NCBI RefSeq assembly: GCF_964213995.1
Contig: NW_027590137.1
Location: 744,001 to 808,000, forward strand
Direction: 5' to 3'
DNA from: Mustelus asterias
Taxonomy: Eukaryota
Length of the DNA stretch: 64,000 nucleotides
Part shown: piece by piece, positions 12,258 through 64,000 of the stretch
Position numbering within the stretch: position 1 is the stretch's first letter
How the letters are laid out: every line of letters starts with the position of its first letter
Program-made: the position numbers and the translations under genes
Notes under the pieces: generated by a model
Seen by the model: only the letters and a program-made list of their open reading frames with translations
Database searches by the model: none
Told to the model about the DNA's origin: nothing

Positions 12258-12901
12258 CAACCACATCCAAATTCCTCGTGCGCATTAAGGCCCCAAGTTC
12301 GTCTGTTTTACCTGCTACGCTCCTTGCATTGAAGTATAAGCACTCCAGACCCCCAGGCTCAGTGAGGTCGTCCTCCCCCAGAGTGCTCCTCTTCTTTGCC
12401 AGCCTTGTCCCAGCCCCAAGCTCGTCCCCAGCCACCACACTTATAGACCTAATAGTTTGATCCCCACCCCCCTGCCATACTAGTTTAAACCCCCCCGAAC
12501 TGCATTAGCAAAGCTCCCAGCCAGGATATTTGTGCCCTTCCAACTTAGTTGTGACACCTCCCTCTTGTACAGGTGCCATCCTCTCCTGAAAACCTCCCAT
12601 GTCTGGAGACAATACACATCTTTTTAGCCTGTCTTGATGCTCTCTCCACTCCCATTGTTTTGTTTCTTAAAGACTGGATTAGTTGTAAGTATTCGCATTC
12701 CAACCATTATTCATGTAAATTGAGTCTGTGTCTTTATAAGTTCTGTTTGTGAACAGAATTCCCACTCACCTGAAGAAGGGGCTTAGAGCCTCGAAAGCTT
12801 GTGTGGCTTTTGCTACCAAATAAACCTGTTGGACTTTAACCTGGTGTTGTTAAACTTCTTACTGTGTTTACCCCAGTCCAACGCCGGCATCTCCACATCA
12901 T
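12258..12901. mobile_element. Composite insertion: CR1 ORF2 N-terminal fragment (-) fused to Penelope-like terminus (+), 10-bp TSD
   Basis: GACTGGAATG at 12248-12257 and 12902-12911, single copy at paralogous empty site 1577-1586; CLYFNARS..KTDEL endonuclease start; PLE end ACGCCGGCATCTCCACATCAT. Confidence 0.8.
12763..12806 (+). ncRNA. Minimal type I hammerhead ribozyme motif in PLE terminus
   Basis: CTGAAGA-a-GGGGC ttaga GCCTC-GAAA-gc-TT with short stem I. Confidence 0.65.
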
Positions 12902-13280
12902 GACTGGAATGTTATACAGAGAGTCAGCATGGAATCGAGTTACCGAATGGATTCCTTCTGTGCTGTAATGACTTTATGACTGGAAGTGTACAACATCGCT
13001 ACAGCATTATATTACAATGCAAGAAATAATAATAAATGTATTTTATTACAGAAACATAAATAATATATCTAATCTGGGTACCATATAATAACACTAGACA
13101 TATCTCTGTCCTATATTACTTTACTGTCTCCTTAAATGTCAGCCATCTCCTGGGGAAAGCTGCCCTTTAATGTGAACATGAGGAAAAGACCATCCTTTTC
13201 GACAGACAAATAAATGTGTCAAGCTGAGGGAGCAAAGGATGTTTACCAGGCTGATTCAGGGAATCGCGGGACTGATGTGG

Positions 13281-15447: not shown

Positions 15448-15591
15448 TTACATAGAAACATGATGTGGAGATGCCGGCGTTGGACTGGGGTGAACACAGT
15501 AAGAAGTCTCACAACACCAGGTTAAAGTCCAACAGGTTTATTTTGTATTTGCTACCAAGTAAACCTGGTGAGACTTCTTACATAGAAACAT
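15448..15591. mobile_element. Short Penelope-like terminus with internal inversion, 14-bp TSD
   Basis: TTACATAGAAACAT at 15448-15461 and 15578-15591 flanking GATGTGGAGATGCCGGCGTTGGACTGGGG... and a reversed piece. Confidence 0.75.
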
Positions 15592-29041: not shown

Positions 29042-30000
29042 CTTGGCGAGATGTTCGTCTTCATCAATGACATGTTGAAGGCTCTGGAGGAGATGTCGTA
29101 GCTTCTCCGCATCTCCTCCAGAGCCTTCAACATGTCATTGATGAAGACGAAGATCTTGCCAAGTCCACACCCCCACTTCTTGCCTTCAAACAACCGCACA
29201 ACCTCAAACAGATCATTGTCCGCAGCAAACTACCCAGCCTTCAGGAGAACAGTGACCATGACACCACACAACCCTGGTACAGCAACCTCTGCAAGACGTG
29301 CCGGATCATTGACACGGATGCCATCATCTCACGTGAGAACACCATCCACCAGGTACATGGTACATACTCTTGCAACTCGGCCAACGTTGTCTACCTGATA
29401 CGCTGCAGGAAAGGATGTCCCGAGGCATGGTACATTGGGAAAACCATGACGCTACGCTACGACAATGGATGAATGAACACCGCTCGACAATCACCAGGCA
29501 AGACTGTTCTCTTCCTGTTGGGGAGCACTTCAGCGGTCACGGGCATTCAGCCTCTGATATTCGGGTAAGCGTTCTCCGAGGCGGCCTTCACGACACACGA
29601 CGGCGCAGAGTCGCTGAGCAGAAACTGATAGCCAAGTTCCGCACACATGAGGACGGCCTCAACCGGGATATTGCGTTCATGTCACACGATCTGTAATCCC
29701 CACAGCCTGCCTGGACTTGCGGAATTTCACTGGCTGTCCTGTCTGGAGACAATAGACATCTCTTTGACCTGTCTTGGTGCTCTCTCCACTCACATTGTTT
29801 GTACCTTTAAGACTTGATTAGCTGTAAGTATTCGCATTCCAACCATTATTCTGTAAATTGAGTTTGTGTCTTTATATGCCCTGTTTGTGAACAGAATTCC
29901 CACTCACCTGAAGAAGGGGCTTGGAGCTCTGAAAGCTTGTGTGGCTTTTGCTACCAAATAAACCTGTTGGACTTTAACCTGGTGTCGTTAAACTTCTTAA
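29042..30000 (+). mobile_element. Penelope-like element: GIY-YIG endonuclease region plus 3' terminus, 5'-truncated with inversion
   Basis: ANVVYLIRCRKGCPEAWYIG..(frameshift)..LRQWMNEHR..PVGEHF..EQKLIAKFRTHEDGLNRD; hairpin 29042-29163; hammerhead motif 29901-29944. Confidence 0.9.
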
Positions 30001-31018: not shown

Positions 31019-31819
31019 ATGGAGAAACCTTGGAAATGTGGGGAGTGTGGTAAAGGATTCAAGTCTTTATTCCGGCTGGAAATCCATCAACGCAGTCACA
31101 CCGGGGAGAAGCCATTCGTCTGTTCTGTGTGTGGGAAGGGATTTACCAAGACAACCTACCTGATGTTACACCAGAGAATTCACACTGAGGAGAGGCCCTT
31201 CAGCTGCACTCACTGTGGGAAGAGGTTCAACAGCACATCCAGCCTCGCTACACACCAGCGGATTCACACTGGGGAGAAGCCGTTCACCTGCTCCGTGTGC
31301 GGTGAGAGATTCACTCGGTCATCCAGCCTTTGGACACATCAGCGAATTCACACTGAGGAGAAACCGTTCAGCTGCACTTCCTGTGGAAAGAGTTTTGGAC
31401 AGTCATCCACCCTGAATGCTCACCAACGCACTCACACCGGGGAGAGACCATTCACCTGCTCCATATGTGGGAAGAAATTCTCTCAGTCATTCGATCTGGT
31501 GAGACACCAGCGACTTCACACCGGGGAGAGACCATTCACCTGCTCGGTGTGTGGGAAGGGATTCGCTCGGTTATTCACCCTCCAGTCCCACCACCGCACT
31601 CACACTCAGGAGAATCCATTCAGCTGCAGTACCTGTGGAAAGAGTTTCAAGCAGTCATCCAACCTTCTGACTCACCGACGCACTCACTCTGGGGAGAGGC
31701 CTTTCACCTGCTCCTTGTGTGGAAAGACATTCACAAGGTCCTCCAGCCTGCTGAGACACCAGCAAATTCATAATAGACTGCAAGGATTGGATTCTGCTTT
31801 TAATCACAGCCAGGATTGA
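31019..31819 (+). CDS. Tandem C2H2 zinc-finger protein, 9 fingers (ZNF-F)
   Basis: MEKPWKCGEC start, 9 intact fingers; candidate acceptor TTCCAG ~30686. Confidence 0.9.
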   Translation: MEKPWKCGECGKGFKSLFRLEIHQRSHTGEKPFVCSVCGKGFTKTTYLMLHQRIHTEERPFSCTHCGKRFNSTSSLATHQRIHTGEKPFTCSVCGERFTRSSSLWTHQRIHTEEKPFSCTSCGKSFGQSSTLNAHQRTHTGERPFTCSICGKKFSQSFDLVRHQRLHTGERPFTCSVCGKGFARLFTLQSHHRTHTQENPFSCSTCGKSFKQSSNLLTHRRTHSGERPFTCSLCGKTFTRSSSLLRHQQIHNRLQGLDSAFNHSQD

Positions 31820-32317: not shown

Positions 32318-32582
32318 ATAAACAAAGAACAAAGAACAAAGAACAATACAGCACAGGAACAGGCCCTTCGGCCCTCCAAGCCCGCGCCGCTCCCCGGTCC
32401 AGGATTGAATCCTGAATCCAGGATCCCCGCCCAATTTTCCAGCCTATCTACATACCAATATCCTATCCACCGAGCTGTCCCTCACAGCTACGATGCTTTG
32501 TTCATTACAACCTATTAACTCACCCCCACCCCCCCATTCCAGACCATGTGATCTCCAGGGAGAGGCGAAAACCCAGAGTGAA
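32318..32582 (-). mobile_element. Young 5'-truncated CR1 3' UTR copy (same subfamily as 62720-64000)
   Basis: (AAAGAAC)n tail; almost identical to ~62725-62968. Confidence 0.85.
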
Positions 32583-32888
32583 TATCACCATCTGCTGGCG
32601 ACGTGCACTTACGGCAGGCGCTGGCATCTGTGAGTCTCGGGGAAGTTCAGTCACTGGACGGTTGGAACTGGCATCCGGTTGATGAAGTGCCAAAATTGAA
32701 TAACATTGTTCATTCCCTGTTGCAAACTTTCATTCCTAACATTGGAATGAAAGTTTGCAACAGGTTCTTGGGTGGCGCGTTCGCCCATTTGTCACCAGGC
32801 ACCGTATAAGAATTTTGTTCCCCATTCCCCATGGGAGATATTGTCTGGAGTTGCAGTTCGGGATTATTGTGTGCATTAGTATTTAAAA

Positions 32889-33085
32889 TAAATATTTATT
32901 GAAGATCTATAACACTGGAAATACGTTTCCAGATCTAGCGGAAAGATTTTCTTGCTGTTTTGCGCAAAGGAAATAAAACTGTTCTTTTTAATGTTGCCGG
33001 GATGCTTCTCTCTGACACCGCCGTGTATCACTGTGCCACGGAGCCCACACTGCTGCAGAGATAGAGCGGATCCCGGACAACAACC
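32889..33085 (+). pseudogene. TCR alpha/delta-like V pseudogene, 3' half only, with RSS (V0)
   Basis: KYLLKIYNTG..AERF(frameshift)..LSDTAVYHCATE; heptamer CACACTG 33046-33052, 24-nt spacer, nonamer ACAACAACC 33077-33085. Confidence 0.75.
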
Positions 33086-33111
33086 CCACACATGGGAGTT
33101 CCAGTTAGGTA

Positions 33112-33125
33112 CCACCAGAGGGCGC
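33112..33125 (+). promoter_or_regulatory. CTCF motif
   Basis: CCACCAGAGGGCGC matches the CTCF core consensus. Confidence 0.6.
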
Positions 33126-33901
33126 TCTTACGCTGATAAACAGAACCAATAATTCACTCTCCATGTGAGTCACAGGGACCTTCCCAAGATATCAGAAAAA
33201 AAACACAACCTCAACAAGAGGTGAGCAACATTTGAGGAGTTATATTAGTTTATTTTAACTTGCATTTGTGCTATCGCCGATCTTCTTAAATCTATTCCAT
33301 TTTGTTAGTTCAGTTGTTGCCCTTGGATGAAGTTTCCGTGTCTCTAATATTGAGCAACTCGATCCCCATCTCCCCAGACAGTTTCTGAAGTCTATTACCG
33401 CGGCCTGGTCACTGGGTTTATTTGATCCGAGAGATGTGCTGCTTCCGAGAAAGTGTAGACACAATGAAGAAATTTCACAATGAAGTGACTGTGATCATTT
33501 AAATAGACATTGAGCACAGAATTCCCCCAATGACCAGTGAACTTCAGAATGTTTCCGTAATGCTGTTTTGTTACTATAAGCAACCCAGAATTTGCAGCTG
33601 CTAATTAACAGAGCAGGGTTTCATCCCCGCAACCCCATCCGGAAAAGTGCACCCGTTCCCCTATCGAGGTGCTGAAATCAGCTCGGCTCGAGGGATTTCC
33701 TTTCGATATCAGCCAGTTCACAACTGAGAGATCTCACAGATTCATAGAGACACAATGATTGAAGTGGCAGGATACTGGACACACTTGGACTGATCACAGG
33801 TTAATGAGCAATCTTGCATAACTGACAGTCACATTATGGCTGCATCTGCCCGCGATTCTGAGCAACCCGCAGCAGACAGGATTTTCAACCTATAGTTAAA
33901 G

Positions 33902-34395
33902 GCAGTTTTTTCAGGGGTCACACTGCTTTCCATCACTGTGAGTTTCAGCGAGAGCGCAGTAATACAAGGCAGCGTCAGTCAGCTGCAGACCCCAGATGGT
34001 CAAACTGGTAAATTTACTCCATGCCTGAAGTTCTCCAGAGAAACGGCTTTGAGCGAAATCTGCTACATCGTCACCAAACATCGAGTTCTTCCCCACTGTA
34101 ACACAGGGTGTTGCCGGTACCAGTGTAAATTGTAGTTGCTCATTGTAGTATCATAGGTACAGTTTAAAGTCACAGTTTTTCCTTCTGTCTGTTATTCTGA
34201 GGACAGCGACTGAGTAACAATCTCCATGACCCAGATCTGAAAAACATGTTCGAACGGAAACAGATCAGACCGACTGAATCCGTAAAATTCAGTTCAAAAA
34301 CAAATTTGTAAAATTAAAGTAAATATGAAATGCGTTTGGTCCATAATTCCCTGTCAGGAATGTTCCCGCACAATCCAGAAGCTGAGTAGCAGCAT
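33902..34395 (-). pseudogene. TCR delta/alpha-like V pseudogene with decayed leader and RSS (V1)
   Basis: Leader MLLLSFWIV from 34395; VTQSLSSE*QTEGKTVTLNCTYDTT..LHWYRQ, frameshift, DFAQSRFSG..LQLTDAALYYCALAET; CACAGTG 33940-33934, nonamer-like GAAAAAACT after a 21-nt spacer. Confidence 0.85.
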
Positions 34396-34908
34396 CGTTG
34401 TTGTCTGCTCTGTAAAAGTGGAGTTGGATATTTGAAGACACCCTTTCCAAACTTCACCCTGTATATTTTGCTGTCGTGTCTCGGAATGCTCTCACTGCAT
34501 TTCCCTGTATCCGCGGTGGTGCTGTGGAGTTGGTAGCTGATGAGCTGTCTGCCAGTGAATGGATTCACCCCGAGCTGGGTTCACTCAGTGTTCTGATAGG
34601 GCGAATGGTTTCCTAGTTAGACACGTGGGAAGAGATTTGTAACCGGAAACATGGGGTCACTGATGGGGTTTATTTATTCCGGCTTCAATTCTTCATCTCC
34701 GATTCCAGTAGAATCGATGCCAGTGAATGTGGGCGGATAAAACCCGAGTCTCAGCTTCTTTCATCAGTTCGACAGAGAGACGCCTCAGTTGGACACGAAG
34801 CAGGCGTTTGACTCCTTGTAAACTCTTCCGAATATTAAACCCAGGTCCTGGTTCCAATCTGAACTCCTTGGACAACTGCTTCAGCAGAAATTTCATGTGA
34901 TCTGAAAA

Positions 34909-35280
34909 ATGTTCCGAATTCACAGACTCTGTTTGCTGTGTTTCGCTCTGACCTGCACTGGGGTGACTGGAGCAGATGAGGTAATGCAGCTTCCTCGGCG
35001 GAAGGTTGTTAGTGAAGGGGGAACCGTATCCATGAACTGCACCACGACCACTACACTTAACAACATATATTGGTACAGACAGTCCCCGAATCAGCCACCC
35101 CAGTACCTGGTGATGGCCACAAGAGAAACCGATCAACGCGGGAGGATCACTGCCTCAATCGGCGGAGGCAGCAAATTCAGCGCCCTGACTGTGAGAGACG
35201 CCGGAGTTACAGACACTGCCACCTATCTCTGCGCCGTGAGCCACAGTGTGACAAACATAGGGTGAGCCCATACAAAAACC
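34909..35280 (+). CDS. TCR alpha-like V segment, intact, leader apparently fused in frame, perfect 23-RSS (V2)
   Basis: MFRIHRLCLLCFALTCTGVTGA-DEVMQ..VSMNC..IYWYRQ..DTATYLCAVS; CACAGTG 35242-35248, 23 nt, ACAAAAACC 35272-35280. Confidence 0.92.
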
Positions 35281-36742
35281 TGCACAGACTGCGAGAGCAA
35301 GTCTGCTGAGTCCGGAGTATCGGCAGAGTGAATGGAATTATAAAAAGTCCATTAACAAAGGAAATGAGCGCAACACAAAATAAAATATAGAATCTAATTA
35401 TTAAAATTCGGTCAGAAATGAAGAGAGATGAAAACAGAGATGGAGAAGAAGAAAGAAGGAAGATGTAAACCGCAATGAGCGAGCAGCAAATAGAAATAGA
35501 AAAGTTTAATCTTCATAGGAGAAGTGGACAGAAAATGAGGAAACCATCGAAAGGGAAATGGAAGAGACTGAAAAGCACTGATTTTGATGGACAGATTGAA
35601 GATCAGATTAAATCATTAACAAAGAGAAGCTTTAATAAAGCAGCGTGTGATTTTTCCAGAACATCAACATTTACTTGCTATTTCAATAGTTGAATGGTCT
35701 GAAACATGTCACCGAAAGACCGGCCACTGGAAATTGCCCTATCGGTAAATTTGGGCTTTGCTCATTATCCCGACTAGGAGATTTCACATTAACTTCATTG
35801 CAGTGTTAATCTAAGCTTCCTTGTGACATTGGTGAATAAATTTTGCAACAAAAACGGAGAACAAGCTACCGATGGTATTGAACAGATGCAGCACCTGAGG
35901 TTTATTAACAACGACGCAGATTTCAGAACACAAGCGGACACGTGTAACCCTGTACACATCATTGTTGAGGACACAGTTCAAACACTTGGATCTGTGCAGT
36001 GACTCTTCGTTCCTTTAGCGTTAATCTCAGACACAATGTGTAAGACAGACTGGGAAAGATGAAGTGGGGATGAGAGAGAGAGCACAGTGCTCAGCGGAGA
36101 CTTGAGCAACTGGGGACATTTTCAATGGAGCTGCAATTCTGTTCAGAAGTGGTTGGCAGACTTGTACCCAATCGGAGCAGGTTTGGAAAAGGTTGAAAAG
36201 GAACTGGTCTCTCAGTGCGTGACTGGATAGCGGTATTTCTGGTGATCTTTATTAAACGGAGGGAGAAGACTTTTGTGTTCTGTGCAGTCGGCTGCTAGAT
36301 GGTTCATGCTAAACTGTAATGGGGACAGAATCTATAAGTAATTTGCAGAGACAAGTGGATAAATATTTGACCAGCAAACTGAAATTTTAAGTATATAAGA
36401 TACATCGAATGCAATCTGCTGATAAAGAATAAGTGGGGAACCCATCAACAGAGACAGTACTTGAGCAATGAGCCGAATGGTCTCTGTTAGTGCTACAACT
36501 GTCTACGATTCTAAGATTATGAACGGCTCTTTTCATTTAGAAAGGCACCAGAGCACAGCCGTTATGAAACAATTTACTCTGTTGTTACACACAGGAAGCA
36601 GATAGTGGTGACACGGTGGCTCATCAGAGTGTAAAGCTCTCGCCCCTCCTTCCCCTCTCCACCACTCAGAGGCTAGGCCTCGGCTGCAAGTACCAGTCTA
36701 GAAATGAGACCCGGACTGATCCTCCTGGGCATCTTCATCAAC

Positions 36743-37549
36743 ATGGAGAAGAACACCCGCAAAAACCGCTTTCCAGTTGGGACTCTGATGCTATTGATAT
36801 TGTGTGAGTTTATTTTTCTATTATTCATTATTTCAACACTCTCTTCATATTATCATAGAAACCCTACAGTACAGAAAGAGGCCATTCGGCCCATCGAGTC
36901 TGCACCGACCACAACCCCACCCAGACCCTACCCCCATATCCCTACATATTTTACCCACTAATCTCTCTAACCTATACATCCCAGGACACTAAGGGGCAAT
37001 TTTAGCATGGCCAATCTACCTAATCTGCACATCTTTGGACTGTGGGAGGAAACCGGAGCACCCGGTTGGAAACCCATGCAGACACGAGGAGAATATGCAA
37101 ACTCCACACAGACAGTGACCCGAGCCGGGAATCGAACCCAGGTCCCTGGCGCTGTAAAGCAGCAGTGCTAACCACTGTGCTACCGTGCCGCCCCATGCGG
37201 TTTGTGAGTGATTTTCTTCTGTTCACAGCCGTTCAGTGTGAGGATCAGAGCTCCCACCCTGAGCAGATGGTGTCTCGGGAAAGGGAACAGTTTGAACTGA
37301 ATTGTCGGCTCTCCATTGGTCCAGACGTTACCGTACTCTGGTACAGACAAACACTGACATGGGCTCCGACATTGATCGCCTCCATTTACGATGGAAGTGC
37401 GACCAAAGGACGTTACACACTGTCCTTTGACCGAGTAAAGAATTCAAAAACCATCTGTATTGATGACACCTCGGTCCAGGACTCCGGAATGTATCTGTGC
37501 GTGAAGCAGACACAGTGAGACAAAGAGCGGATCCGGATGAACAATATCC
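36743..37549 (+). CDS. TCR alpha-like V segment with leader exon (36743-36803), V exon (37229-37510) and 23-RSS (V3)
   Basis: MEKNTRKNRFPVGTLMLLIL then GTGAGT phase-1 donor; TTCACAG acceptor 37228; LNC..LWYRQ..DSGMYLC; CACAGTG 37511-37517, 23 nt, ACAATATCC 37541-37549. Confidence 0.85.
36853..37194 (-). mobile_element. HE1-type SINE inside V3 leader intron
   Basis: Full head-to-tail SINE match. Confidence 0.9.
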
Positions 37550-37985
37550 TGCTCACTGCCCTGCCTCCGCTGCATGTTTAAATTTACCCAAAACTGGTGC
37601 CTTTAGCAATGCCGGTGATATTAGAAGTATCAATTTTCCATTTTTAACCTTCCATCTGGATAGAGTTGCAATATCCGATAACTGTCAGTACAGGTGCAGT
37701 GTATGGAAACATATTAAGTAAACTCTCTTGTTTCCTTGTTCCACACACTGAGTAAAGAAACAAACAGGAAAAATAACTGCTTCTCAGACACCGAAGCGGA
37801 TAGAAATGCAACAGAAAGATGGCTAAACATGAAAAAAAGGAAGATAGAAAGATCTATAATAAGTAGATTTGTTCTTTGTTCTTTGGATAGATAGACGCAT
37901 AGATCAGTTAATTCTGTCTATGTACGCAAGCACTTTATTTATCCCTGTATGTATCTTCATGTTAATTGTATTCTTATTGTGACAG

Positions 37986-38305
37986 ATGTTCCTTTTCACT
38001 CGGAAACATTTCAGGTGTCGCTGAATCGGGTAAAACTGGGACAGACCGTCTCCCTTCACCACAATGTTACTGTCACTACAAATGACTTTGTATTCTGGTA
38101 CCGGCAATTCACCAATCAAGCTCCCGAGTATCTCGTATCCACATTCAGAGATGTAACAGTTGAGGGAAGGTTTAAAGCATTTGTGGACCGTGTGAAAGGC
38201 TTCACTGCTCTCACTGTTAACACGGTTGAGTTGTCAGACGCTGCGGTGTATTACAGTGCAGTGAGGCACGGTGAAACAGAGAGATGAGGAGCCTGTACAA
38301 TAACT
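37986..38305 (+). pseudogene. TCR alpha-like V ORF lacking both canonical cysteines, with 23-RSS (V4)
   Basis: GQTVSLHHN..FWYRQ..APEYLV..LSDAAVYYSAVR; CACGGTG 38267-38273, 23 nt, ACAATAACT 38297-38305; no convincing leader found. Confidence 0.82.
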
Positions 38306-38310
38306 CACTC

Positions 38311-38567
38311 ATGATGTGGAGATGCCGGCGTTGGACTGGGGTAAATACGGTAAGAAGTCTTACAACACCAAGTTAAAGTCCAACAGGTTTATTTGGTAGC
38401 AAAAGCCACTAGCTTTCGGAACAGGCTGTTCCTTCGTCAGGTGAGTGGGAGTTCTGATCACAAACAGGGCACAAAGACACAAACTCAATTTACATGAATA
38501 ATGATTGGAATGTGAGTCTTTACAGCTAATCAAGTCTTAAAGGTACAGACAATGTGAGTGGAGGGAG
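38311..38567 (-). mobile_element. Penelope-like terminal fragment with 13-bp TSD and hammerhead motif
   Basis: CAATAACTCACTC at 38298-38310 and 38568-38580; minus strand CTGACGA-a-GGAACA gcc TGTTCC-GAAA-gc-TA at 38405-38448. Confidence 0.85.
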
Positions 38568-39616
38568 CAATAACTCACTCGACATGGGGACAGTGGGCAC
38601 AACAGCCCATAGACTTTAGAAATGAGTGTGATGCAAGTAAAATCGACAGAAAATGTTCTTGGTCCGAGTAATATGATGGGATTGAAAATGCATGTTATTA
38701 TTTCTAATAATTGAACTTGCAGATTAACACTCAAAAGAAACATGTAAATCATTCTTTGATACATTGGCTGATTGAAATTTGGTTGTCATAATTGTTTTAT
38801 TGTCAGCGAGTTTTCAAAACTTCCGTTCGTTCGAAATGAACAATTCAAGCATATCAGTTGTGGATTTATGAGTTTATTAAAGCAAAATTCATCCATCTAC
38901 ACAGCTGAACATGCACTGTGCTAATGGCGCAGGCGCACCTGAAAACTGAGATAAATGATTTGTATCAATACTAAACAGCAAATGTAGCAAAATCAAAATG
39001 ACAAAGGCAGCAGATGTCGCAATAACATCAAAGTAATAAAACACATAATAAACTGCAACAATAAAAATCCTGCAATATGATGCAGCAACATAAACAAAAT
39101 TGAGAATCGCTGTATCACAGATGACGCCCCAAGACCTCATCTTTCGCTAAAACTTGCAGAACCGTCAGTTCCCCTGTCACAGGTGACAGCTGGAGCATTT
39201 TGACACCACCACAAACTACAGCGCAAGAGCCGATGTGTGAATTACGGAAGTTCTAAACCAGAAACTTTGGGATCTATCCCCAATTCAGGGCATTGTGGCA
39301 ACAGACATTATCCAGTCACAGAGGTTGATGATCTGTTTGTAAATTCTTCCAATAAGCCGAATGACAAATGATAAGAACAGGAGAGTTGCCTGGCCAGCCT
39401 TACTGCAGGAGGTGATGGAAACCACTGCAGGACTTTGCCAGGCATAATCATGGAGCAATCAAATGGAATTCTTTGATAAACCAGCTCCACCTCAAGTAAG
39501 AAAACATATCTTGTAATTAATAGTTTGAGAAATCACCAGGATTTCAGGTTTCATTTCAGACTCACTCTGATCATAATGTTTTCCTAACGCTCTGTTATGT
39601 TGAGCGAGCCTCTGAC

Positions 39617-40537
39617 AGTTTTTGTACAGGTTCAGCCCAGCTCTGTGTCTCTGTGGGTCTCAGTGCGCAGTAATAAACCCCGGAGTCTGCCAGCTCTGTT
39701 TTAGACACTTTCAGCGGGACGGTGCGGGTTGTATCATTGAGCTCCGCTAAAAAACGGTCCCCTGAGGATCTCCCTGTGTTTCCGCTGTATTTATTTGTCT
39801 GCAGCAGGAACTCCATGAATCCGCTGGGATACTGACGGTAACCAGAACAAGTATAGAGTGTTCGCACTTGTAGCTGAATAATTACAGAACAACCCTACAT
39901 TGACTCCTTCAGTGACGGCGACTGCAGGTGTCTGTGAAACAGAATCTCCTCGACAATGCCCTGTAAAAACACAAAGGAATATTAAGTTACACAATGCGTC
40001 TGCATTCTGTTTCCCCCAGGACTTGCTCGTCATCCTGAACATAACCTCAGAGAGAAATCAGACAGCTGAACAGAAGCATATTTTTCACAGTTCAGTGGCT
40101 GGAACGGGAAGGTGCTGGCGGTGATTAAATAAAACTTCCAACATAAACATTCTGTGCTTTCTAACGAGATTAGTTCCTCGCCTTCATTCCCTGTGACTGG
40201 AACGGGAAATTGCTCACTGTCTGTGTGTTTGAAAGTCTAGTGATTGTCAAATCATTTTTTGTTATCAGAGAAGTTTGAATCTCGGCCTAACTTCGAAAAT
40301 GTGTCGACTGCCATCAAACAGTGTTCAGTGTTGAAATCAGCGAGATCCGAATGACTATTCGAAGTTGGGATCAAGCCAATCCTCCGATCACCTACCCTCA
40401 CCCCCTTCCACTGAACGAACTGCCCGATATAATATAGTGTGAGGGAAACATGTGAAACACAGTGTTGAGCAACTTGTGAACTTACCAGTTAAAAGAGCTG
40501 CTGCTGTGAGGAATAAATATAGGGTAACAGGAGACAT
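39617..40537 (-). pseudogene. TCR alpha/delta-like V with leader exon (40537-40486), V exon (39960-39656), single +1 frameshift, 23-RSS (V5)
   Basis: MSPVTLYLFLTAAALLT then G-GTAAG donor; GHCRGDSVSQTP..LFCNYS..LFW[+T]YRQ..ADSGVYYCALR; CACAGAG 39655-39649, 23 nt, ACAAAAACT 39625-39617; TGAGTCA at 40616-40622 upstream. Confidence 0.88.
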
Positions 40538-40817
40538 GTTTGCAGAGAGCTCGCAGTGGATGTGACCAGAAAGGGTTGAAGCTGAAATTGTTTTCGTCAA
40601 GAGTTGGGAAGAAGTTGAGTCATATCCGGGCCCCTATTGATTGGTTCATTGCTGCCAACCTCATCATATGACATCCAATTGGCTTCAAATAATAAAATTC
40701 AGTCTCACCAATTCCAATTCAGAATTCTCGGAAGAAGATATTTGGTGAGGTATGTAAATCAACAAGCCCCAAAATGTTCTCAATGACCCCATTCCAAACC
40801 TGATTGAACAGAATCTG

Positions 40818-41338
40818 ATGTGGAGATGCCGGCGTTGGACTGGGGTGAACACAGTAAGAAGTCTCACAACACCAGGTTAAAGTCCAACAGGTTTATTTGG
40901 TAGCAAACACCATAAGCTTTCGGAGCGCTGCTCCTTCGTCAGATGGAGTGGAAATGTGCTCTCAAACAGTGCACAGAGACACAAAATCAAGTTACAGAAT
41001 ACTGAATTAGAATGCGAATCCCTACAGCCAGCCAGGTCTTAAAGATGCAGACAATGCAGATGCAGAAATAGGCAGAGCCCCCAGGATGGGTAATTAGCAG
41101 TAAAAAAAAATTAGCAGACAAGTCCCTCCACCCACATTGTCTCCATCTTTAAGATCTGGTTGGCTGTAGGGATTCGCATTCTAATCAGTATTCTGTAACT
41201 TGATTTTGTGTCTCTGTGCACTGTTTGAGAGCACATTTCCACTCCATCTGACGAAGGAGCAGCGCTCCGAAAGCTTATGGTGTTTGCTACCAAATAAACC
41301 CATTGGACTTTAACCTGGTGTTGTGAGACTTCTTACTG
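40818..41338. mobile_element. Penelope-like inverted-repeat insertion with 13-bp TSD and captured central sequence
   Basis: TGAACAGAATCTG at 40805-40817 and 41339-41351; arms ~40818-41056 and ~41125-41340 are inverted copies. Confidence 0.88.
41242..41282 (+). ncRNA. Minimal type I hammerhead ribozyme motif (mirror copy on minus strand 40908-40948)
   Basis: CTCCAT-CTGACGA-a-GGAGC agc GCTCC-GAAA-gc-TT-ATGGTG. Confidence 0.7.
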
Positions 41339-41627
41339 TGAACAGAATCTGCCAGCAGAGGGCACCAAATCCCTGCATGCTCATTAGAAGGTCACGTGGG
41401 TCCAACGCCGAAGCCAAAAGGGATGTGTTCCTGAGTGAGGTCACAATGGGGCTGGTCCCTGCATTGCGTCTCAATCATCCCATTCCCATTCACTGAGATA
41501 CTCAGTCAGACAGACTGGCGGCGCTATGTGACAGTAAGTGAAGAATTATGTTCATTAACACAGTTTAGCAGATTGACGACAATAGATTGTAATCTGATTT
41601 AATATAGTTCACGGTATATATGTATAT

Positions 41628-41977
41628 ATCATAGAAATCATAGAAACCCTACAGTACAGAAAGAGGCCATTCGGCCCATCGAGTCTGCACCGACCACAAT
41701 CCCACCCAGGCCCTACCCCCATATCCCTACATATTTTACCCACTAATCCCTCTAATCTACACATCTCAGGACACTAAGGGCAATTTTTAACCTGGCCAAT
41801 CAACCTAACCCGCACATCATTGGACAGTGGGAGGAAACCGGAGCACCCGGAGGAAACCCACGCAGACACGAGGAGAATGTGCAAACTCCACACAGACAGT
41901 GACCCAAGCCGGGAATCGAACCCAGGTCCCTGGAGCTGTGAAGCAGCAGTGCTAACCACTGTGCGACCGTGCCGCCC
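41628..41977 (-). mobile_element. HE1-type SINE
   Basis: Full match, (ATCATAGAA)n tail. Confidence 0.92.
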
Positions 41978-42078
41978 ATGTATATATATATGGACAGGTT
42001 GTAAAATGGAAACTTACGCACACATACAGATATATCGTTCCTCTTTAACCTTGGACTCTTATTTATCTACTTTTACAG

Positions 42079-42376
42079 GCGGAATATGTGCAGTAACTCA
42101 GTCTCTGGTGCCGTTAACTGTGCAAGAAGAAGGTTTAGCGCAGTTCGATTGTGAATAATCAGACCAACTATGCAATTGCATCAGCAGAAATAGGCAGAGC
42201 ACCCAGGATGGGTAATTAGCACTAAAAAAAATTAGCACTGGGAAAGGGAAAATCTCAGGAACATTTGTGATGGCTGTTGACGAGTCTGGTTCCTCAGTAT
42301 AGGCGGCATGAGCGCGGAGGATGGAACGGCCGATTACTATGCTGTGAGGCACAGCGTCAGGAAAAGCACATAAACC
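42079..42376 (+). pseudogene. Decayed TCR V pseudogene (V6)
   Basis: TTTACAG acceptor, AVTQSLVPLTVQEEGLAQFDCE*, ..GATTACTATGCTGTGAGG, CACAGCG 42350-42356, 11 nt, ACATAAACC 42368-42376. Confidence 0.72.
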
Positions 42377-43479
42377 TCAGCGCATTCAGTCAAATGTTTT
42401 TGGGGCCTTTACCTGAGACATTAGTTTCTTTCTAGCTTTACAGAGTCAGGTTTTTATATCAAACGTTTGGATTGCTGTCCCTGCCCTTGTTGAAATCAAT
42501 GGGGAGCCTGTCTGGGAAATCAGAATTCATAACTGTACCCCAAGTGATATCAGCTCAGTAAATAACTTGGAACATAGTGTGCCGGCCGAGGTGGAGAATG
42601 CCGACAGGCGTGCAGTAATGCCGCTCATTATGGGCTGTTCATCCTGCCAGTTAACTGAAAAGGATCCCAAGGCAGTGAGTCTGTGTCACTGGGTTCTATA
42701 TCAAAAACAAAATGTATAAAAGTCTGGGATTGAATTTAACCAATGAAGTGAAAAATTGTCCTTTAGAAAGCAAATCACCGAACAGCACAACCAGGACATC
42801 AGAAAGGTCCTTGGACAGCAACTGTGCCTGGTGTAGATTCGGACAGGCAATAACTCACATCTAACAGTATGTTGTTCCTTCTCGTCTGAAGTTAAATAAG
42901 GAATGCAGATCAGGAATATATTTCACTTACTGGGAGACTGGAGAAAGTTTTCCAGGGACAGCTTTATATAAATGCCCAGTTCTCTGATGAAGCACAGGCT
43001 ACAAACATGCCAGGACTGTTCTTCTGCCGGTTTTTATACGACCGATATTGATCTTCACTGCACAGAAATAGGTGGCGGTGTCTGTGATCTTGGCGTCGCT
43101 AACATTTAGAACGTTTCGAGTCCAGATGACCCTTCGTTAAATTGTTGTTGTGAGCTGCATTATTTGTGAGAATGAGAGTGACGGAGTGGGATTGATCCAC
43201 AGCCAGTGTCACCAGTTTGAGGACAGGAGGGGAGAGAACCTAGAGAGAAGACTAGAAACTGAATCGAGCAATGAGCAGAGAGGGAGAAGTGTGTGTGGGG
43301 CACAGAATTGTTTGCTCTGAATTTCTGTCCTGTACTTACACTGATAACTTCTGTAAACTCCTTTTGCAGGGAGTTCGAGGGAGAGAAGTTCCAGATGGGA
43401 AAGTCAGAACAAACATCATATCAAAATCTGACAGTCACTTGATTCATCAGGACCTGAATATCATCAACCTCTGAATGTG

Positions 43480-44704
43480 GAAGGAGAAATGTTTGTCTGT
43501 TCTGTCTGTGGGGAAAGATTTTAAACATCAGTGTAACTGAAAAAGCACCGAGACACACATACACCCGAGTGAGAGTGTTCCAGTGAACTGACTGTGGAAA
43601 GAACTTTAACCATTAAACAGCCTGAAAAAACATCATACCATTCAATGTGGAGAAATGTACAGGTGTTCTGTGTGAGGCTCCAACTGATCATCCAACCTGC
43701 AGAGACAAATGAATAATTGAATCGCGGAGAAAGCGTGGACATATGGTGACTGTGGAATGGGATTAATTTTCCCTTTTGAACTGGGACATGATCAATGCAG
43801 GGACCTTTCACCTTCTCCATGTGTGGAGATGGATTTACTCAGTTATCCAGTCTGTCGACACACCAGCCAGTTCATACCCAGGAGAGGCTGTTCAGATGTT
43901 CCACATGTGGGAAGGAATTTGCTGACTCATGTGACCTCCTGGCTCATGAGCAAGTTCACACTGAGGAGAGCGCATTCACCAGGCCTGTGTGTGGCAACGA
44001 ATTCACTCAGTCATCCCAGCTCACTGAACATCAACATGTACACAGTGATCAGAGACTTTTTAAATGTTCTGACTGTGAGAAGAGCTTTAAAAGCAAGAAG
44101 TATCTGCAAATACACCAGCGACTTCACACTGGGGAGAAACTGTTCATCTTGTGTGTGAGTGGGAAGAGATTTGTTCAGTCATTTGACTTGCTAATTCACC
44201 AGCGACATCACATTGGGGTGAGGCCATTCACTTGCTGTGTGTGTGAAAAGGGATTCACTCAACCACACCAGCGAGTTCACACTGAGGAGAGGCCATTTAT
44301 TTGCTGTGTGTGTGGGAAGGGATTCACTCAGACATCCCACCTTGTGACACACCAGCAGGTTCACACTGGGAACAGACCATTCATCCTCTGAGAGTGTGAA
44401 GGGATTCATTCAGTCATACCAGCTTCTGTTGCACCAGCGAATTCACATTGGAGAGAGGCCATTCACCTGCTCCATGTGTGCTAAGGGATTCATTCAGTCA
44501 TCAGACAGTCTGGTGCACCAACGAGTTCATACTAAGGAGAGGCTATTCACCTGCTCTGTATGTGGGAAAAGATTCTCTCAGTCTTCCCAACTCCTGAAAC
44601 ACCAGCGAGTTCACACTGGGGAGAGGCCATTCACCTGCTCTGAGTGTGGGAAGGGATTCACTCAGTCATCACACCTTGTGACACACCAGCGAGTTCACAA
44701 ATGA
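43480..44704 (+). pseudogene. C2H2 zinc-finger pseudogene (ZNF-G)
   Basis: Fingers split across ORFs 43795-44391 and 44396-44704 by stop/frameshift; several broken fingers. Confidence 0.85.
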
Positions 44705-58827: not shown

Positions 58828-58938
58828 AGTTTAACAACACCAGGTTAAAGTCCAACAGGTTTATTTGGTAGCAAAAGCCCCTAGCTTTCGGAGCCTTAAG
58901 CTCCTTCTTCAGGTGAGTGGGAATTCCTCACCTGAAAG
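58828..58938 (-). mobile_element. Penelope-like terminal fragment with hammerhead motif
   Basis: Minus strand CTGAAGA-a-GGAGC ttaag GCTCC-GAAA-gc-TA at 58877-58920; small terminal inversion. Confidence 0.8.
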
Positions 58939-62719: not shown

Positions 62720-64000
62720 AAACAAAGAACAATACAGCACAGGAACAGGCCCTTCGGCCCTCCAAGCCCGCGCCGCTCCCCGGTCCAGGATTGAATCCTG
62801 AATCCAGGATCCCCGCCCAATTTTCCAGCCTATCTACATACCAATATCCTATCCACCGAGCTGTCCCTCACAGCTACGATGCTTTGTTCATTACAACCTA
62901 TTAACTTACCCCCACCCCCCCATTCCAGACCATGTGATCTCCAGGGAGAGGCGAAAACCCAGAGTGAAAAACCCCAGGGCCAATATGGGGAAAAAAAATC
63001 TGGGAAATTCCTCTCCGACCCCCTGAGGCGATCGAAACGAGTCCAGGAGATCACAATGGCCCCGATCGGAAAATGCTTCCCAACCCTAGTCATTTCCACT
63101 TCCACGAACACCATATGAATTCCCTGCCCCCGAGACAGGTTCCCAACTATCCGCAGTCTCACTCTGTACTGGCACCAGCAAGATGATCATAGAATGAAGC
63201 CTTGAAACGAGAAACCAGGAACAATTAGCCCGCGCCGCTCCCTGGTCCAAACTCGACCACTCTTTTGTATCCCTCCATTCCCACTCCGTTCATATAGCTG
63301 TCTAGATAAGTCTTAAACGTTCCCAGTGTGTCCGCCTCCACCACCTTGCCCGGCAACACATTCCAGGCCCCCACGACCCTCTGTGTGAAATATGTCCTTC
63401 TGATATCTGTGTTAAACCTCCCCCCCTTCACCTTGAACCTATGACCCCTCGTGAACGTCACCACCGACCCGGGGAAAAGCTTCCCACCGTTCACCCTATC
63501 GATGCCTTTCATAATTTTATACACCTCTATTAAGTCTCCCCTCATCCTCCGTCTTTCCAAGGAGAACAACCCCAGTTTCCCCAATCTCTCCTCATAACCA
63601 AGCCCCTCCATACCAGGCAACATCCTGGTAAACCTCCTCTGTACTCTCTCCAAAGCCTCCACGTCCTTCTGGTAGTGTGGCGACCAGAACTGGACGCAGT
63701 ATTCCAAATGCGGCCGAACCAACGTTCTATACATCTGCAACATCAGACCCCAACTTTTATACTCTATGCCCCGTCCTATAAAGGCAAGCATGCCATATGC
63801 CTTCTTCACCACCTTCTCCACCTGTGACGTCACCTTCAAAGATCTGTGGACTTGCACACCCAGGTCCCTCTGCGTCTCTACACCCTTTATGGTTCTTCCA
63901 TTTATCGTGTAGCTCCTCCCTACATTATTCCCACCAAAATGCATCACTTCGCATTTATCAGGATTGAACTCCATCTGCCATTTCCTTGCCCAAATTTCCA
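62720..64000 (-). mobile_element. Young CR1 LINE 3' end with extended 3' UTR, runs off window end
   Basis: Open ORF 63225-63974 with CR1 RT C-terminal motifs; tail at ~62720. Confidence 0.94.

What the first reader, a model, noticed from the sequence alone, without database searches (positions are those of the whole stretch)
32580..42380. Island of seven TCR alpha/delta-like V segments embedded in a C2H2 zinc-finger gene cluster
Seen: seven V segments (V0+, V1-, V2+, V3+, V4+, V5-, V6+) with WYRQ and D-x-A/G-x-Y-x-C-type motifs and RSSs, packed in ~10 kb between ZNF-F and ZNF-G, in both orientations, with no D, J or C recognised in the window. Established: 23-RSS V segments of this type belong to TCR alpha/delta loci. 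Inference: this is either a shark TCR alpha/delta V array interleaved with a fast-evolving ZNF cluster and co-amplifying by the same duplications and inversions, or a dispersed orphon V cluster. If functional, the mixed orientation would need both deletional and inversional rearrangement.
Basis: partly seen in the sequence, partly recalled or inferred. Interest (0 to 1): 0.85.

Follow-up and report, generated by a model that had tools for sequence, protein, structure and literature searches.

The report
Shark T-cell-receptor V-gene island among zinc-finger genes
A 10-kb patch of shark DNA holds eight T-cell-receptor variable-gene elements, two of them apparently usable and six broken, lying in a gap of a zinc-finger gene cluster; it looks like an ordinary, decaying stretch of a receptor V-gene field, and which receptor chain it serves is still open.

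Summary
All seven V segments are present in the stated orientations between two C2H2 zinc-finger genes, and I found an eighth relic (V7). Six 23-RSS-like sites lie in the island, against 0.8 expected; five of them abut V ends.

- **Condition:** only V2 and V3 look usable. V4 is an open frame that has lost both cysteines. V1, V5 and V6 carry stops or frameshifts. V0 and V7 are truncated relics. All three minus-strand elements are dead, so no inversional joining is needed.
- **Chain type:** V2, V3 and V4 resemble TCR V-alpha in sequence; V2 also does so in predicted fold. However, the only expressed relative I found (nurse shark cDNA, 58% identical to V2) is joined to TCR-beta J-C. The alpha/delta label therefore rests on likeness only.
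- **Co-amplification:** not supported. The V segments are 20-39% identical to each other, the zinc-finger duplication units carry no V, and the repeat shared by V3 and V6 is a common SINE.
- **Locus or orphon:** the window has no J or C, so this remains open.
- **Not possible here:** reads and RNA could not be examined.

The scan has noted similar zinc-finger/V islands elsewhere in this genome. Verdict: an ordinary new member of a known kind, of moderate interest.

The parts
32908..33085 (+). V0: 3' relic of a V (end of CDR2 and FR3, with one frameshift; ...DTAVYHCATEP) plus its RSS, CACACTG-24-ACAACAACC, at 33046-33085. The 5' part is missing.
33904..34236 (-). V1: full-length V pseudogene. 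It has a canonical splice acceptor, a TAA stop in FR1 and a frameshift after WYRQHP, and ends YYCALAET. The heptamer CACAGTG is perfect; the nonamer is poor (about 6/9 at a 21-nt spacer).
34909..35280 (+). V2: intact V with the leader fused to the V region (no leader intron). C23, WYRQ and YLC are present. The RSS, CACAGTG-23-ACAAAAACC at 35242-35280, is perfect (16/16).
36743..36803 (+). V3 candidate leader exon (L-part1): 20 codons plus 1 nt, followed by a GTGAGT donor. Its phase 1 matches the V-exon acceptor. A further in-frame ATG lies at 36704.
   Evidence: read from the sequence; inferred, with no transcript evidence
37229..37549 (+). V3: intact V exon following the acceptor ...ttctgttcacag. 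WYRQ and YLC are present, plus an extra Cys in FR3. RSS CACAGTG-23-ACAATATCC at 37511-37549. The 425-nt leader intron holds a SINE.
37949..38305 (+). V4: an open frame related to V2 (38% identity), with a V2-like fused leader. Both canonical cysteines are lost (C23 to H, C104 to S). RSS CACGGTG-23-ACAATAACT. A repeat copy starts about 6 nt after the nonamer.
39617..39960 (-). V5: V pseudogene with a canonical acceptor and a 1-nt insertion between W41 and Y42; it ends YYCALR. RSS CACAGAG-23-ACAAAAACT. The candidate leader exon at 40079..40046 ends in an in-frame TGA.
42079..42376 (+). V6: badly decayed V pseudogene. It has a canonical acceptor and the FR1 cysteine, then stops, frameshifts and a shortened middle; it ends YYAV with no cysteine. 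Its RSS-like site, CACAGCG-11-ACATAAACC, has an 11-nt spacer.
   Evidence: not detected by tblastn
43056..43125 (-). V7: a 70-nt relic of a V2-like FR3 (...DTATYFCAVK). The heptamer and part of the spacer are deleted, and the nonamer ATAAAAACC is kept.
31019..31819 (+). Left flanking C2H2 zinc-finger ORF (ZNF-F): 266 aa, with 9 zf-C2H2 stretches.
43304..44391 (+). Right flanking zinc-finger gene (ZNF-G). Its 5' unit (43304-43800) is 72-75% identical to the 5' regions of six other zinc-finger genes in the window. Its finger ORF (43795-44391) is partly degenerate, with 3 clean zf-C2H2 stretches.

Best explanation
This is a stretch of a shark T-cell-receptor V-gene field. Eight germline V elements belonging to at least six old, mutually distant V subgroups sit in a 10-kb gap of a tandem C2H2 zinc-finger array riddled with SINE and LINE copies.

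Two elements appear usable. V2 has no leader intron and a consensus-perfect 23-RSS. V3 has the canonical two-exon structure with a SINE in its leader intron and a good 23-RSS. Both lie on the + strand. I infer that RAG would join them by deletion to a 12-RSS partner (a J, or a D) outside the window, downstream on the + strand. The other six are decay products: one open frame without cysteines, three pseudogenes and two relics cut by insertions.

The V segments were not copied together with the zinc-finger genes. The zinc-finger array and the transposons expanded around an older V array.

By sequence the V segments are V-alpha/delta-like, and I think the TRA/TRD V field is the most likely home. 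That assignment is an inference, not something shown here.
For: Shown by tool results:
- Anatomy and RSSs.
- RSS excess: 6 sites in the island against a mean of 0.8 in 100 shuffles.
- V-set hits.
- TCR alpha chains are the best single-domain matches for V2, V3 and V4. The nearest Atlas cluster is 'TVA11' for V2 and V3. The V2 model (pLDDT 72) matches TCR alpha chains at TMq 0.84-0.86.
- The V2 lineage is conserved in other cartilaginous fishes: Chiloscyllium punctatum 64%, a JGI contig 59%, nurse shark cDNA 58%, Scyliorhinus torazame 41%, Callorhinchus milii 43%. A relative is expressed in a rearranged transcript (P0008).
- V2 has an intact frame and a 16/16 RSS, while every defective neighbour with an RSS has a degraded one. 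This fits selection on V2.
- Pairwise V identity is 20-39%. The zinc-finger units carry no V, and the repeats shared between V flanks are ordinary SINE or repeat families.

Supporting context:
- Functional fish TRA/TRD loci show the same traits. In Atlantic salmon, 123 of 239 TRAV are pseudogenes, there is an inverted block of 29 TRAV and a V-free gap of more than 300 kb (PMC8559430, passages).
- Shark V exons of alpha/delta type are reported scattered between IgH clusters (PMC12227049, section 6).
- Unchecked scan notes report another V 329.5 kb upstream on the same piece and many zinc-finger/V islands on other pieces.
Against: - There is no J, D or C in the window, so linkage to any constant gene is unknown.
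- Six of the 8 elements are defective, a higher share than in the salmon locus.
- The only expressed relative of V2 that I found carries TCR-beta J-C, not alpha or delta.
- V3 has no relative at all in the word-indexed protein collection.
There is therefore no evidence that V2 or V3 are transcribed or rearranged, and the V5 frameshift was not checked against reads.
- The V3 leader exon is inferred from splice signals alone.
- The half-domain of V5 gave no chain-specific matches.
Confidence: 0.5

Rival explanations
1. Inert orphon cluster. A piece of a V array was carried into a zinc-finger region, away from any J-C, and is decaying. V2 and V3 are simply not yet broken.
For: - Six of 8 elements are defective.
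- No J or C lies within 64 kb.
- Transposon insertions lie in and beside the V segments.
- Neither homologous-protein search with a window V (V2; V3) found a relative; V2's relatives came only from the full HMMER scan.
- Unchecked scan notes place similar islands on many separate pieces. If those pieces are different chromosomes, that would fit dispersal.
Against: - V2 keeps a perfect 16/16 RSS and an open frame, and V3 an open frame and a perfect heptamer (nonamer 7/9), beside neighbours with several lesions each.
- The V2 lineage is conserved across cartilaginous fishes and is expressed in nurse shark.
- High pseudogene shares, inverted blocks and long V-free gaps also occur in working fish TRA/TRD loci.
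- The many 'pieces' may reflect a fragmented assembly of one large locus.
Confidence: 0.3
2. The island, or at least V2 and its relative V4, serves the TCR-beta chain. Sharks would have a V-alpha-like V family in, or available to, the TRB locus.
For: - P0008 (UniParc UPI0001F848D4) has a V 58% identical to V2, including the leader.
- Its J-C stretch is identical to that of nurse shark 'T-cell receptor beta chain' ADW95893.1.
- That reference aligns with mammalian TCR beta chains across V, J and the start of C.
- Both cDNAs have a 'DR' in CDR3. This could come from a shared D-beta, but that is my inference.
- Unchecked scan notes mention non-beta-type V families inside beta-type arrays of this genome.
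Against: - This rests on one cDNA from another species at 58% identity. It could be an inter-locus trans-rearrangement or a cloning chimera.
- V2, V3 and V4 score best against V-alpha. The true nurse shark V-beta scores best against V-beta and shows little likeness to the V2 group over the V part in the alignment.
- There is no D-beta, J-beta or C-beta in the window.
Confidence: 0.15

Closest known systems
TRA/TRD V-gene arrays of fishes (Atlantic salmon, rainbow trout; PMC8559430, passages read)
   Same: - Many V subgroups side by side.
- About half of the V genes are pseudogenes or ORF-class.
- There are blocks in inverted orientation and long V-free stretches.
- 23-RSS V segments join to a distant J-C cluster.
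   Different: - Here the array is broken up by a C2H2 zinc-finger tandem cluster; 'zinc' has 0 occurrences in that paper's main text.
- The defective share is higher (6 of 8).
- Linkage to J-C is not shown.
- One family (V2, V4) lacks the leader intron.
Shark antigen-receptor complex: TCR alpha/delta locus linked to IgM, IgW and IgNAR clusters (PMC12227049, section 6 read)
   Same: - Elasmobranch genome.
- Alpha/delta-type V exons are scattered well away from the core locus, between other gene clusters.
- Unchecked scan notes for this genome also place IgM constant genes beside alpha/delta-type V arrays.
   Different: - No Ig cluster, UrIg2 or PSMB5 lies in this window.
- Zinc-finger genes are not mentioned in that paper's main text (0 occurrences of 'zinc' or 'ZNF'). 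Its table S1 could not be seen.
Unrelated multigene families embedded in TCR V regions (trypsinogen genes in TRB)
   Same: A tandem family of unrelated genes sits between groups of V segments without stopping locus function. [quoted passage not shown] The mammalian cases are recalled.
   Different: The embedded family here is C2H2 zinc-finger genes, and function of the locus around it is not shown.
V-gene orphons (for example human IGK, IGH and TRBV orphons; recalled, not checked here)
   Same: A cluster of V segments with RSSs but no J-C nearby, mostly defective.
   Different: Orphons are defined by lying outside the main locus, which cannot be judged from this window. V2 also keeps a perfect RSS and belongs to a conserved, expressed lineage.

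Membership tests
Germline rearranging V gene segment (IG/TR V-GENE) | V-set Ig domain with the first cysteine, the conserved Trp (WYRQ) and the second cysteine | tested here: met
   - Met fully by V2 and V3.
- V4 lacks both cysteines.
- V1, V5 and V6 are broken by stops or frameshifts.
- V0 and V7 are fragments.
- Pfam V-set was hit by 5 of 6 pieces.
Germline rearranging V gene segment (IG/TR V-GENE) | RSS (heptamer, 12- or 23-nt spacer, nonamer) starting directly at the 3' end of the V region | tested here: met
   - V2: 16/16 matches with a 23-nt spacer.
- V3, V4, V5: 13-14/16 with a 23-nt spacer.
- V0: 14/16 with a 24-nt spacer.
- V1: perfect heptamer, poor nonamer.
- V6: 11-nt spacer.
- V7: heptamer deleted.

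Germline rearranging V gene segment (IG/TR V-GENE) | Split leader: L-part1 exon, phase-1 intron, then a V exon starting with the last leader residues | tested here: inconclusive
   - Canonical acceptors are present at V1, V3, V5 and V6.
- The V3 donor and acceptor phases agree.
- V2, and apparently V4, have the whole leader fused to the V region.
- Relative P0004 is also one continuous frame from the leader through to the RSS.
- There is no transcript evidence.
Germline rearranging V gene segment (IG/TR V-GENE) | Somatic joining to (D)J and splicing to a constant region | not testable with these tools
- No RNA run was on record.
- Only a 58% relative from another species is seen rearranged.
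TRA/TRD-locus V (TRAV/TRDV) | Sequence and fold closest to V-alpha/V-delta | tested here: met
   - V2, V3 and V4 have TCR alpha chains as their best single-domain PDB matches.
- Atlas first hit is 'TVA11' for V2 and V3.
- Foldseek: alpha chains at TMq 0.84-0.86 for V2.
- V5's half-domain was not discriminating.
- V0, V1, V6 and V7 were not scored.
TRA/TRD-locus V (TRAV/TRDV) | Physical linkage to TRAJ/TRAC or TRDD/TRDJ/TRDC | not testable with these tools
   There is no J or C in the 64-kb window, and the rest of the chromosome is not available. Scan notes give only another V 329.5 kb upstream.
TRA/TRD-locus V (TRAV/TRDV) | Expressed with C-alpha or C-delta | tested here: inconclusive
   - I found 0 relatives joined to C-alpha or C-delta.
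- The one rearranged relative found (P0008) carries C-beta.
- The protein collections hold few shark cDNAs.
TRB-locus V (TRBV) | Sequence closest to V-beta | tested here: not met
   None of the named single-chain TCR rows among the 60 best matches listed for V2, V3 or V4 is a TCR beta chain; a few scFv or bispecific rows contain a V-beta next to a V-alpha. The control nurse shark beta chain P0152 does give beta chains as its best single-chain matches.
TRB-locus V (TRBV) | Expressed with D-beta/J-beta/C-beta | tested here: inconclusive
   One nurse shark cDNA of the V2 lineage (58% identity) has a J-C identical to ADW95893.1. This V2 itself was not tested.
Orphon V cluster | Lies outside the main locus, with no J-C in reach | not testable with these tools
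   The window alone cannot show this. There is no J or C within it.
   - The zinc-finger 5' units are 72-75% identical in DNA across 7 genes, and none of the other six has a V beside it.
- The V segments are only 20-39% identical in protein.
- The V3/V6 shared repeat is a SINE with 10 or more copies.
C2H2 zinc-finger tandem cluster (context) | Neighbouring ORFs are arrays of C2H2 fingers | tested here: met
   Eight of 8 ORFs scanned hit zf-C2H2 above the Pfam cut-off. No other domain type stood out.

The most novel reading that the evidence does not exclude
Sharks keep an ancient V lineage that looks like V-alpha and lacks the leader intron (V2/V4 here; relatives in bamboo shark, catshark, nurse shark and elephant shark), and this lineage is not tied to one chain. 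It would be used on TCR beta in nurse shark while sitting among alpha/delta-type V segments here. On this reading, V pools are shared or exchanged between TCR loci, and the many zinc-finger-embedded V islands of this genome are working parts of one dispersed, multi-megabase receptor field.
Probability: 0.12. Interest if true: 0.7.

Novelty: new member of a known kind. Interest (0 to 1): 0.38.

Why it matters
The germline layout of shark TCR loci is still poorly described. The nurse shark alpha/delta locus was reported as unassembled in 2018 (PMC5931798, passages).

If such zinc-finger-embedded islands belong to the working locus, RAG has to reach V segments across long stretches of unrelated, fast-evolving genes. 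The usable V repertoire would then be much smaller than the count of V-like elements; here it is 2 of 8.

The beta-chain cDNA with a V2-like V is a warning against naming shark V segments by likeness to mammalian chains. If the island is instead an orphon cluster, it is an ordinary by-product of genome turnover.

Tried and rejected
- **Co-amplification of V with zinc-finger genes:** rejected.
- **V3 and V6 as duplicates because they share a 340-nt upstream repeat:** rejected. It is a SINE family with 10 or more copies in the window.
- **V5's long 'leader-to-V' open frame as a second intron-less V:** rejected. A canonical acceptor lies inside it, and the upstream frame is intron read-through.
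- **V4's nonamer as part of the downstream repeat:** rejected. The repeat begins about 6 nt after the nonamer.
- **Ig light chain as the identity of P0008:** considered, because its J-C stretch scored best against lambda chains. Rejected, because the same stretch is identical in a nurse shark chain that aligns with TCR beta throughout.
- **Searches that gave nothing:**
  - The search for homologous proteins with V2 and with V3.
  - The search for related loci in metagenome contigs with V2.
  - PDB search with the V5 half-domain, which was not chain-specific.
- **Not in print as far as I could search:** zinc-finger genes interleaved with shark TCR V segments. Searches were made, plus term look-ups in PMC12227049, PMC12698447 and PMC8559430. 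These cover open-access text only.
- **Papers and files I could not see:**
  - The key shark locus papers were not held: PMID 20488795 / PMC3222143, PMC7039070 and PMC7909615.
  - Supplements, such as table S1 of PMC12227049, are closed and may bear on this.
  - The abstract of the 2010 nurse shark paper is recalled, not seen.

Full report
**Anatomy.** Between the C2H2 zinc-finger ORFs at 31019-31819 and 43795-44391 lie eight V-like elements.
- The eighth, V7 (43125..43056, minus strand), is a 70-nt relic found by tblastn and read.
- With 153 probe proteins, V-like matches occur only between 32.9 and 43.1 kb of the 64-kb window. In this window the V segments therefore form one island and are not interleaved gene by gene.

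**More than chance.**
- At a fixed threshold (heptamer at least 6/7 with CAC, nonamer at least 6/9, spacer 22-24) the window has 10 sites.
- Six of them lie in 32900-43200. In 100 dinucleotide shuffles the same stretch held 0.8 on average and 4 at most.
- Five of the six begin exactly where a V coding region ends, three or four codons after the Y-x-C motif.
- Pfam V-set was hit by 5 of 6 pieces scanned.

**State of each element.**
- **V2 (34909-35241)** is intact. Its signal peptide is contiguous with the V region, so there is no leader intron. Its RSS, CACAGTG-23-ACAAAAACC, is perfect.
- **V3** has an intact V exon (37229-37510) behind a good acceptor and the RSS CACAGTG-23-ACAATATCC.
  - A leader exon can be proposed at 36743-36803. 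It has 20 codons plus 1 nt and a GTGAGT donor, and its phase matches the acceptor.
  - The 425-nt intron holds a SINE. This gene model is inferred from splice signals only.
- **V4 (37949-38266)** is an open frame 38% identical to V2 with a V2-like fused leader. Both structural cysteines are replaced (His and Ser). By IMGT usage, as quoted in PMC8559430, it would be class 'ORF'.
- **V1** has a stop in FR1 and a frameshift in FR2.
- **V5** has a 1-nt insertion between W41 and Y42, and a TGA at the end of its candidate leader exon.
- **V6** has several stops and frameshifts, no second cysteine and an 11-nt spacer.
- **V0 and V7** are 3' relics.
- In total, 2 of 8 are potentially functional. The three minus-strand elements (V1, V5, V7) are all dead.

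**Kind of V.**
- phmmer against PDB sequences gives TCR alpha chains as the best single-domain matches for V2 (from E about 7e-14), V3 (about 7e-9) and V4 (about 4e-9). The higher-ranked rows are multi-V constructs whose scores add up.
- The Atlas feature search puts 'TVA11' first for V2 and V3.
- An AlphaFold model of V2 (mean pLDDT 72) matches human TCR alpha chains at TMq 0.84-0.86 and 34-39% identity.
- The C-terminal half of V5 gave only weak, mixed matches.
- V0, V1, V6 and V7 were not scored. My impression that V1 and V5 look alpha-like rests on recalled motifs.

**The beta twist.**
- A full HMMER scan with V2 found close single-V relatives:
  - P0005, Chiloscyllium punctatum, 64%.
  - P0004, a 1001-nt JGI contig, 59%.
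  - P0008, UniParc UPI0001F848D4, 58%.
  - More distant relatives in Scyliorhinus torazame and Callorhinchus milii.
- The lineage is therefore old and conserved in cartilaginous fishes.
- P0004 is one continuous frame from the leader through the V into the RSS, so the intron-less form occurs in germline DNA elsewhere too.
- P0008 is a rearranged transcript. After the V come a short junction, a J (…FGAGTKLTVLE) and the start of a constant region.
- That J-C stretch is identical to the one in 'T-cell receptor beta chain [Ginglymostoma cirratum]' ADW95893.1. That protein aligns with mammalian TCR beta chains over V, J and the start of C.
- A V of the V2 lineage is thus expressed on C-beta in nurse shark. 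This is one cDNA from another species at 58% identity. It may reflect a true V-beta family, a trans-rearrangement or a chimera.
- It does mean the alpha/delta label for V2 rests on likeness alone.

**Context and the co-amplification idea.**
- All 8 zinc-finger ORFs scanned are C2H2 arrays.
- The 5' unit of the right-hand zinc-finger gene (43304-43800) is 72-75% identical to the 5' regions of six other zinc-finger genes in the window. None of those has a V beside it.
- The V segments are 20-39% identical to each other in protein. They are distinct, old subgroups and not recent copies.
- The 340-nt repeat upstream of both V3 and V6 has 10 or more copies in the window. The repeat after V4, which recurs as an inverted pair at 40850-41340, also has copies elsewhere and begins about 6 nt after V4's nonamer.
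- The picture is of an old V array into and around which zinc-finger genes and transposons spread. V7 is cut off at its 5' side, where unrelated sequence follows; that this is an insertion is my inference. V0 is also truncated on its 5' side.

**Linkage.**
- The window has no J: one F/W-G-x-G-T/S motif was found in six frames, without an RSS. No constant-domain match was found.
- Unchecked notes from this scan say that another intact V sits in a zinc-finger cluster 329.5 kb upstream on the same piece.
- They also report similar zinc-finger/V islands on several other pieces, NAR-TCR and IgM constant genes abutting alpha/delta-type V arrays, and beta-type arrays containing non-beta V families.
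- These are leads only. They show that the scan has met this arrangement before on other DNA of this genome.

**Literature.**
- In PMC8559430 (passages) Atlantic salmon has 239 TRAV: 104 functional, 12 ORF and 123 pseudogenes. It also has an inverted block of 29 TRAV and a V-free gap of more than 300 kb, and 13 of 14 inverted functional TRAV are expressed.
[quoted passage not shown] - I found no paper linking zinc-finger clusters with TCR V arrays. Three key shark papers were not held.

**Reading.**
- Most likely (0.5), this is a decaying stretch of a working TCR V field, probably TRA/TRD. V2 and V3 would be usable by deletional RAG joining to a 12-RSS partner outside the window. The intact frame and perfect RSS of V2 beside heavily damaged neighbours, together with the conservation and expression of its lineage, argue for selection.
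- The orphon reading (0.3) fits the 6 of 8 defective elements and the absence of J-C.
- The beta reading (0.15) rests on one cDNA.
- Shown: the anatomy, the RSSs, the state of each V, the likeness to V-alpha, the C-beta relative, and the lack of co-duplication.
- Inferred: use in rearrangement, the partner and its direction, the V3 leader exon, and the chain.

**Limits.**
- No RNA run was on record.
- The species is coded, and I can say only that it is an elasmobranch. This rests on the nearest relatives and on the scan's unchecked NAR-TCR notes.
- The single-base lesions of V5 and V1 were not checked against reads.

Noticed in passing
window 34909-35241 (V2) and 37949-38266 (V4): V2 has its whole signal peptide fused to the V region, with no leader intron, and V4 appears to share this. 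A 59%-identical relative on a JGI contig (P0004) is also one continuous frame from the leader to the RSS. The intron-less form is therefore a trait of the lineage and not a local accident.
   Followed up: partly
window 40850-41340 and 38312-38569: A near-perfect inverted repeat (156-nt arms, 99% complementary) shares sequence with the stretch just after V4's RSS. The shared part is a repeat family with further copies at about 12640-12920, 15460-15547, 29780-29999 and 58828-58926. It starts about 6 nt after V4's nonamer, so I see no captured V fragment.
   Followed up: partly
window 36852-37193 and 41637-41977, with copies elsewhere: A roughly 340-nt SINE family has 10 or more copies in the window at 75-96% identity. 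One copy sits in V3's leader intron and another directly upstream of V6.
   Followed up: partly
window 42350-42376: The decayed V6 carries an RSS-like site with an 11-nt spacer (CACAGCG-11-ACATAAACC) instead of 23. This could be a 12-nt deletion in a pseudogene or a V of another RSS type.
   Followed up: no
window 32335-32590 versus 62721-62976: A 256-nt stretch is 98% identical between the left edge of the island and the far right of the window. It looks like a young repeat or a recent small duplication.
   Followed up: no
window 43795-44391: The zinc-finger gene to the right of the island looks partly degenerate. Several fingers have lost their cysteines or histidines, and only 3 clean zf-C2H2 stretches remain, against 9-16 in its neighbours.
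   Followed up: partly
protein P0008 (UniParc UPI0001F848D4), not in the window: This nurse shark transcript joins a V-alpha-like V of the V2 lineage to TCR-beta J-C. It is either an unrecognised V-beta family or an inter-locus rearrangement.
   Followed up: partly
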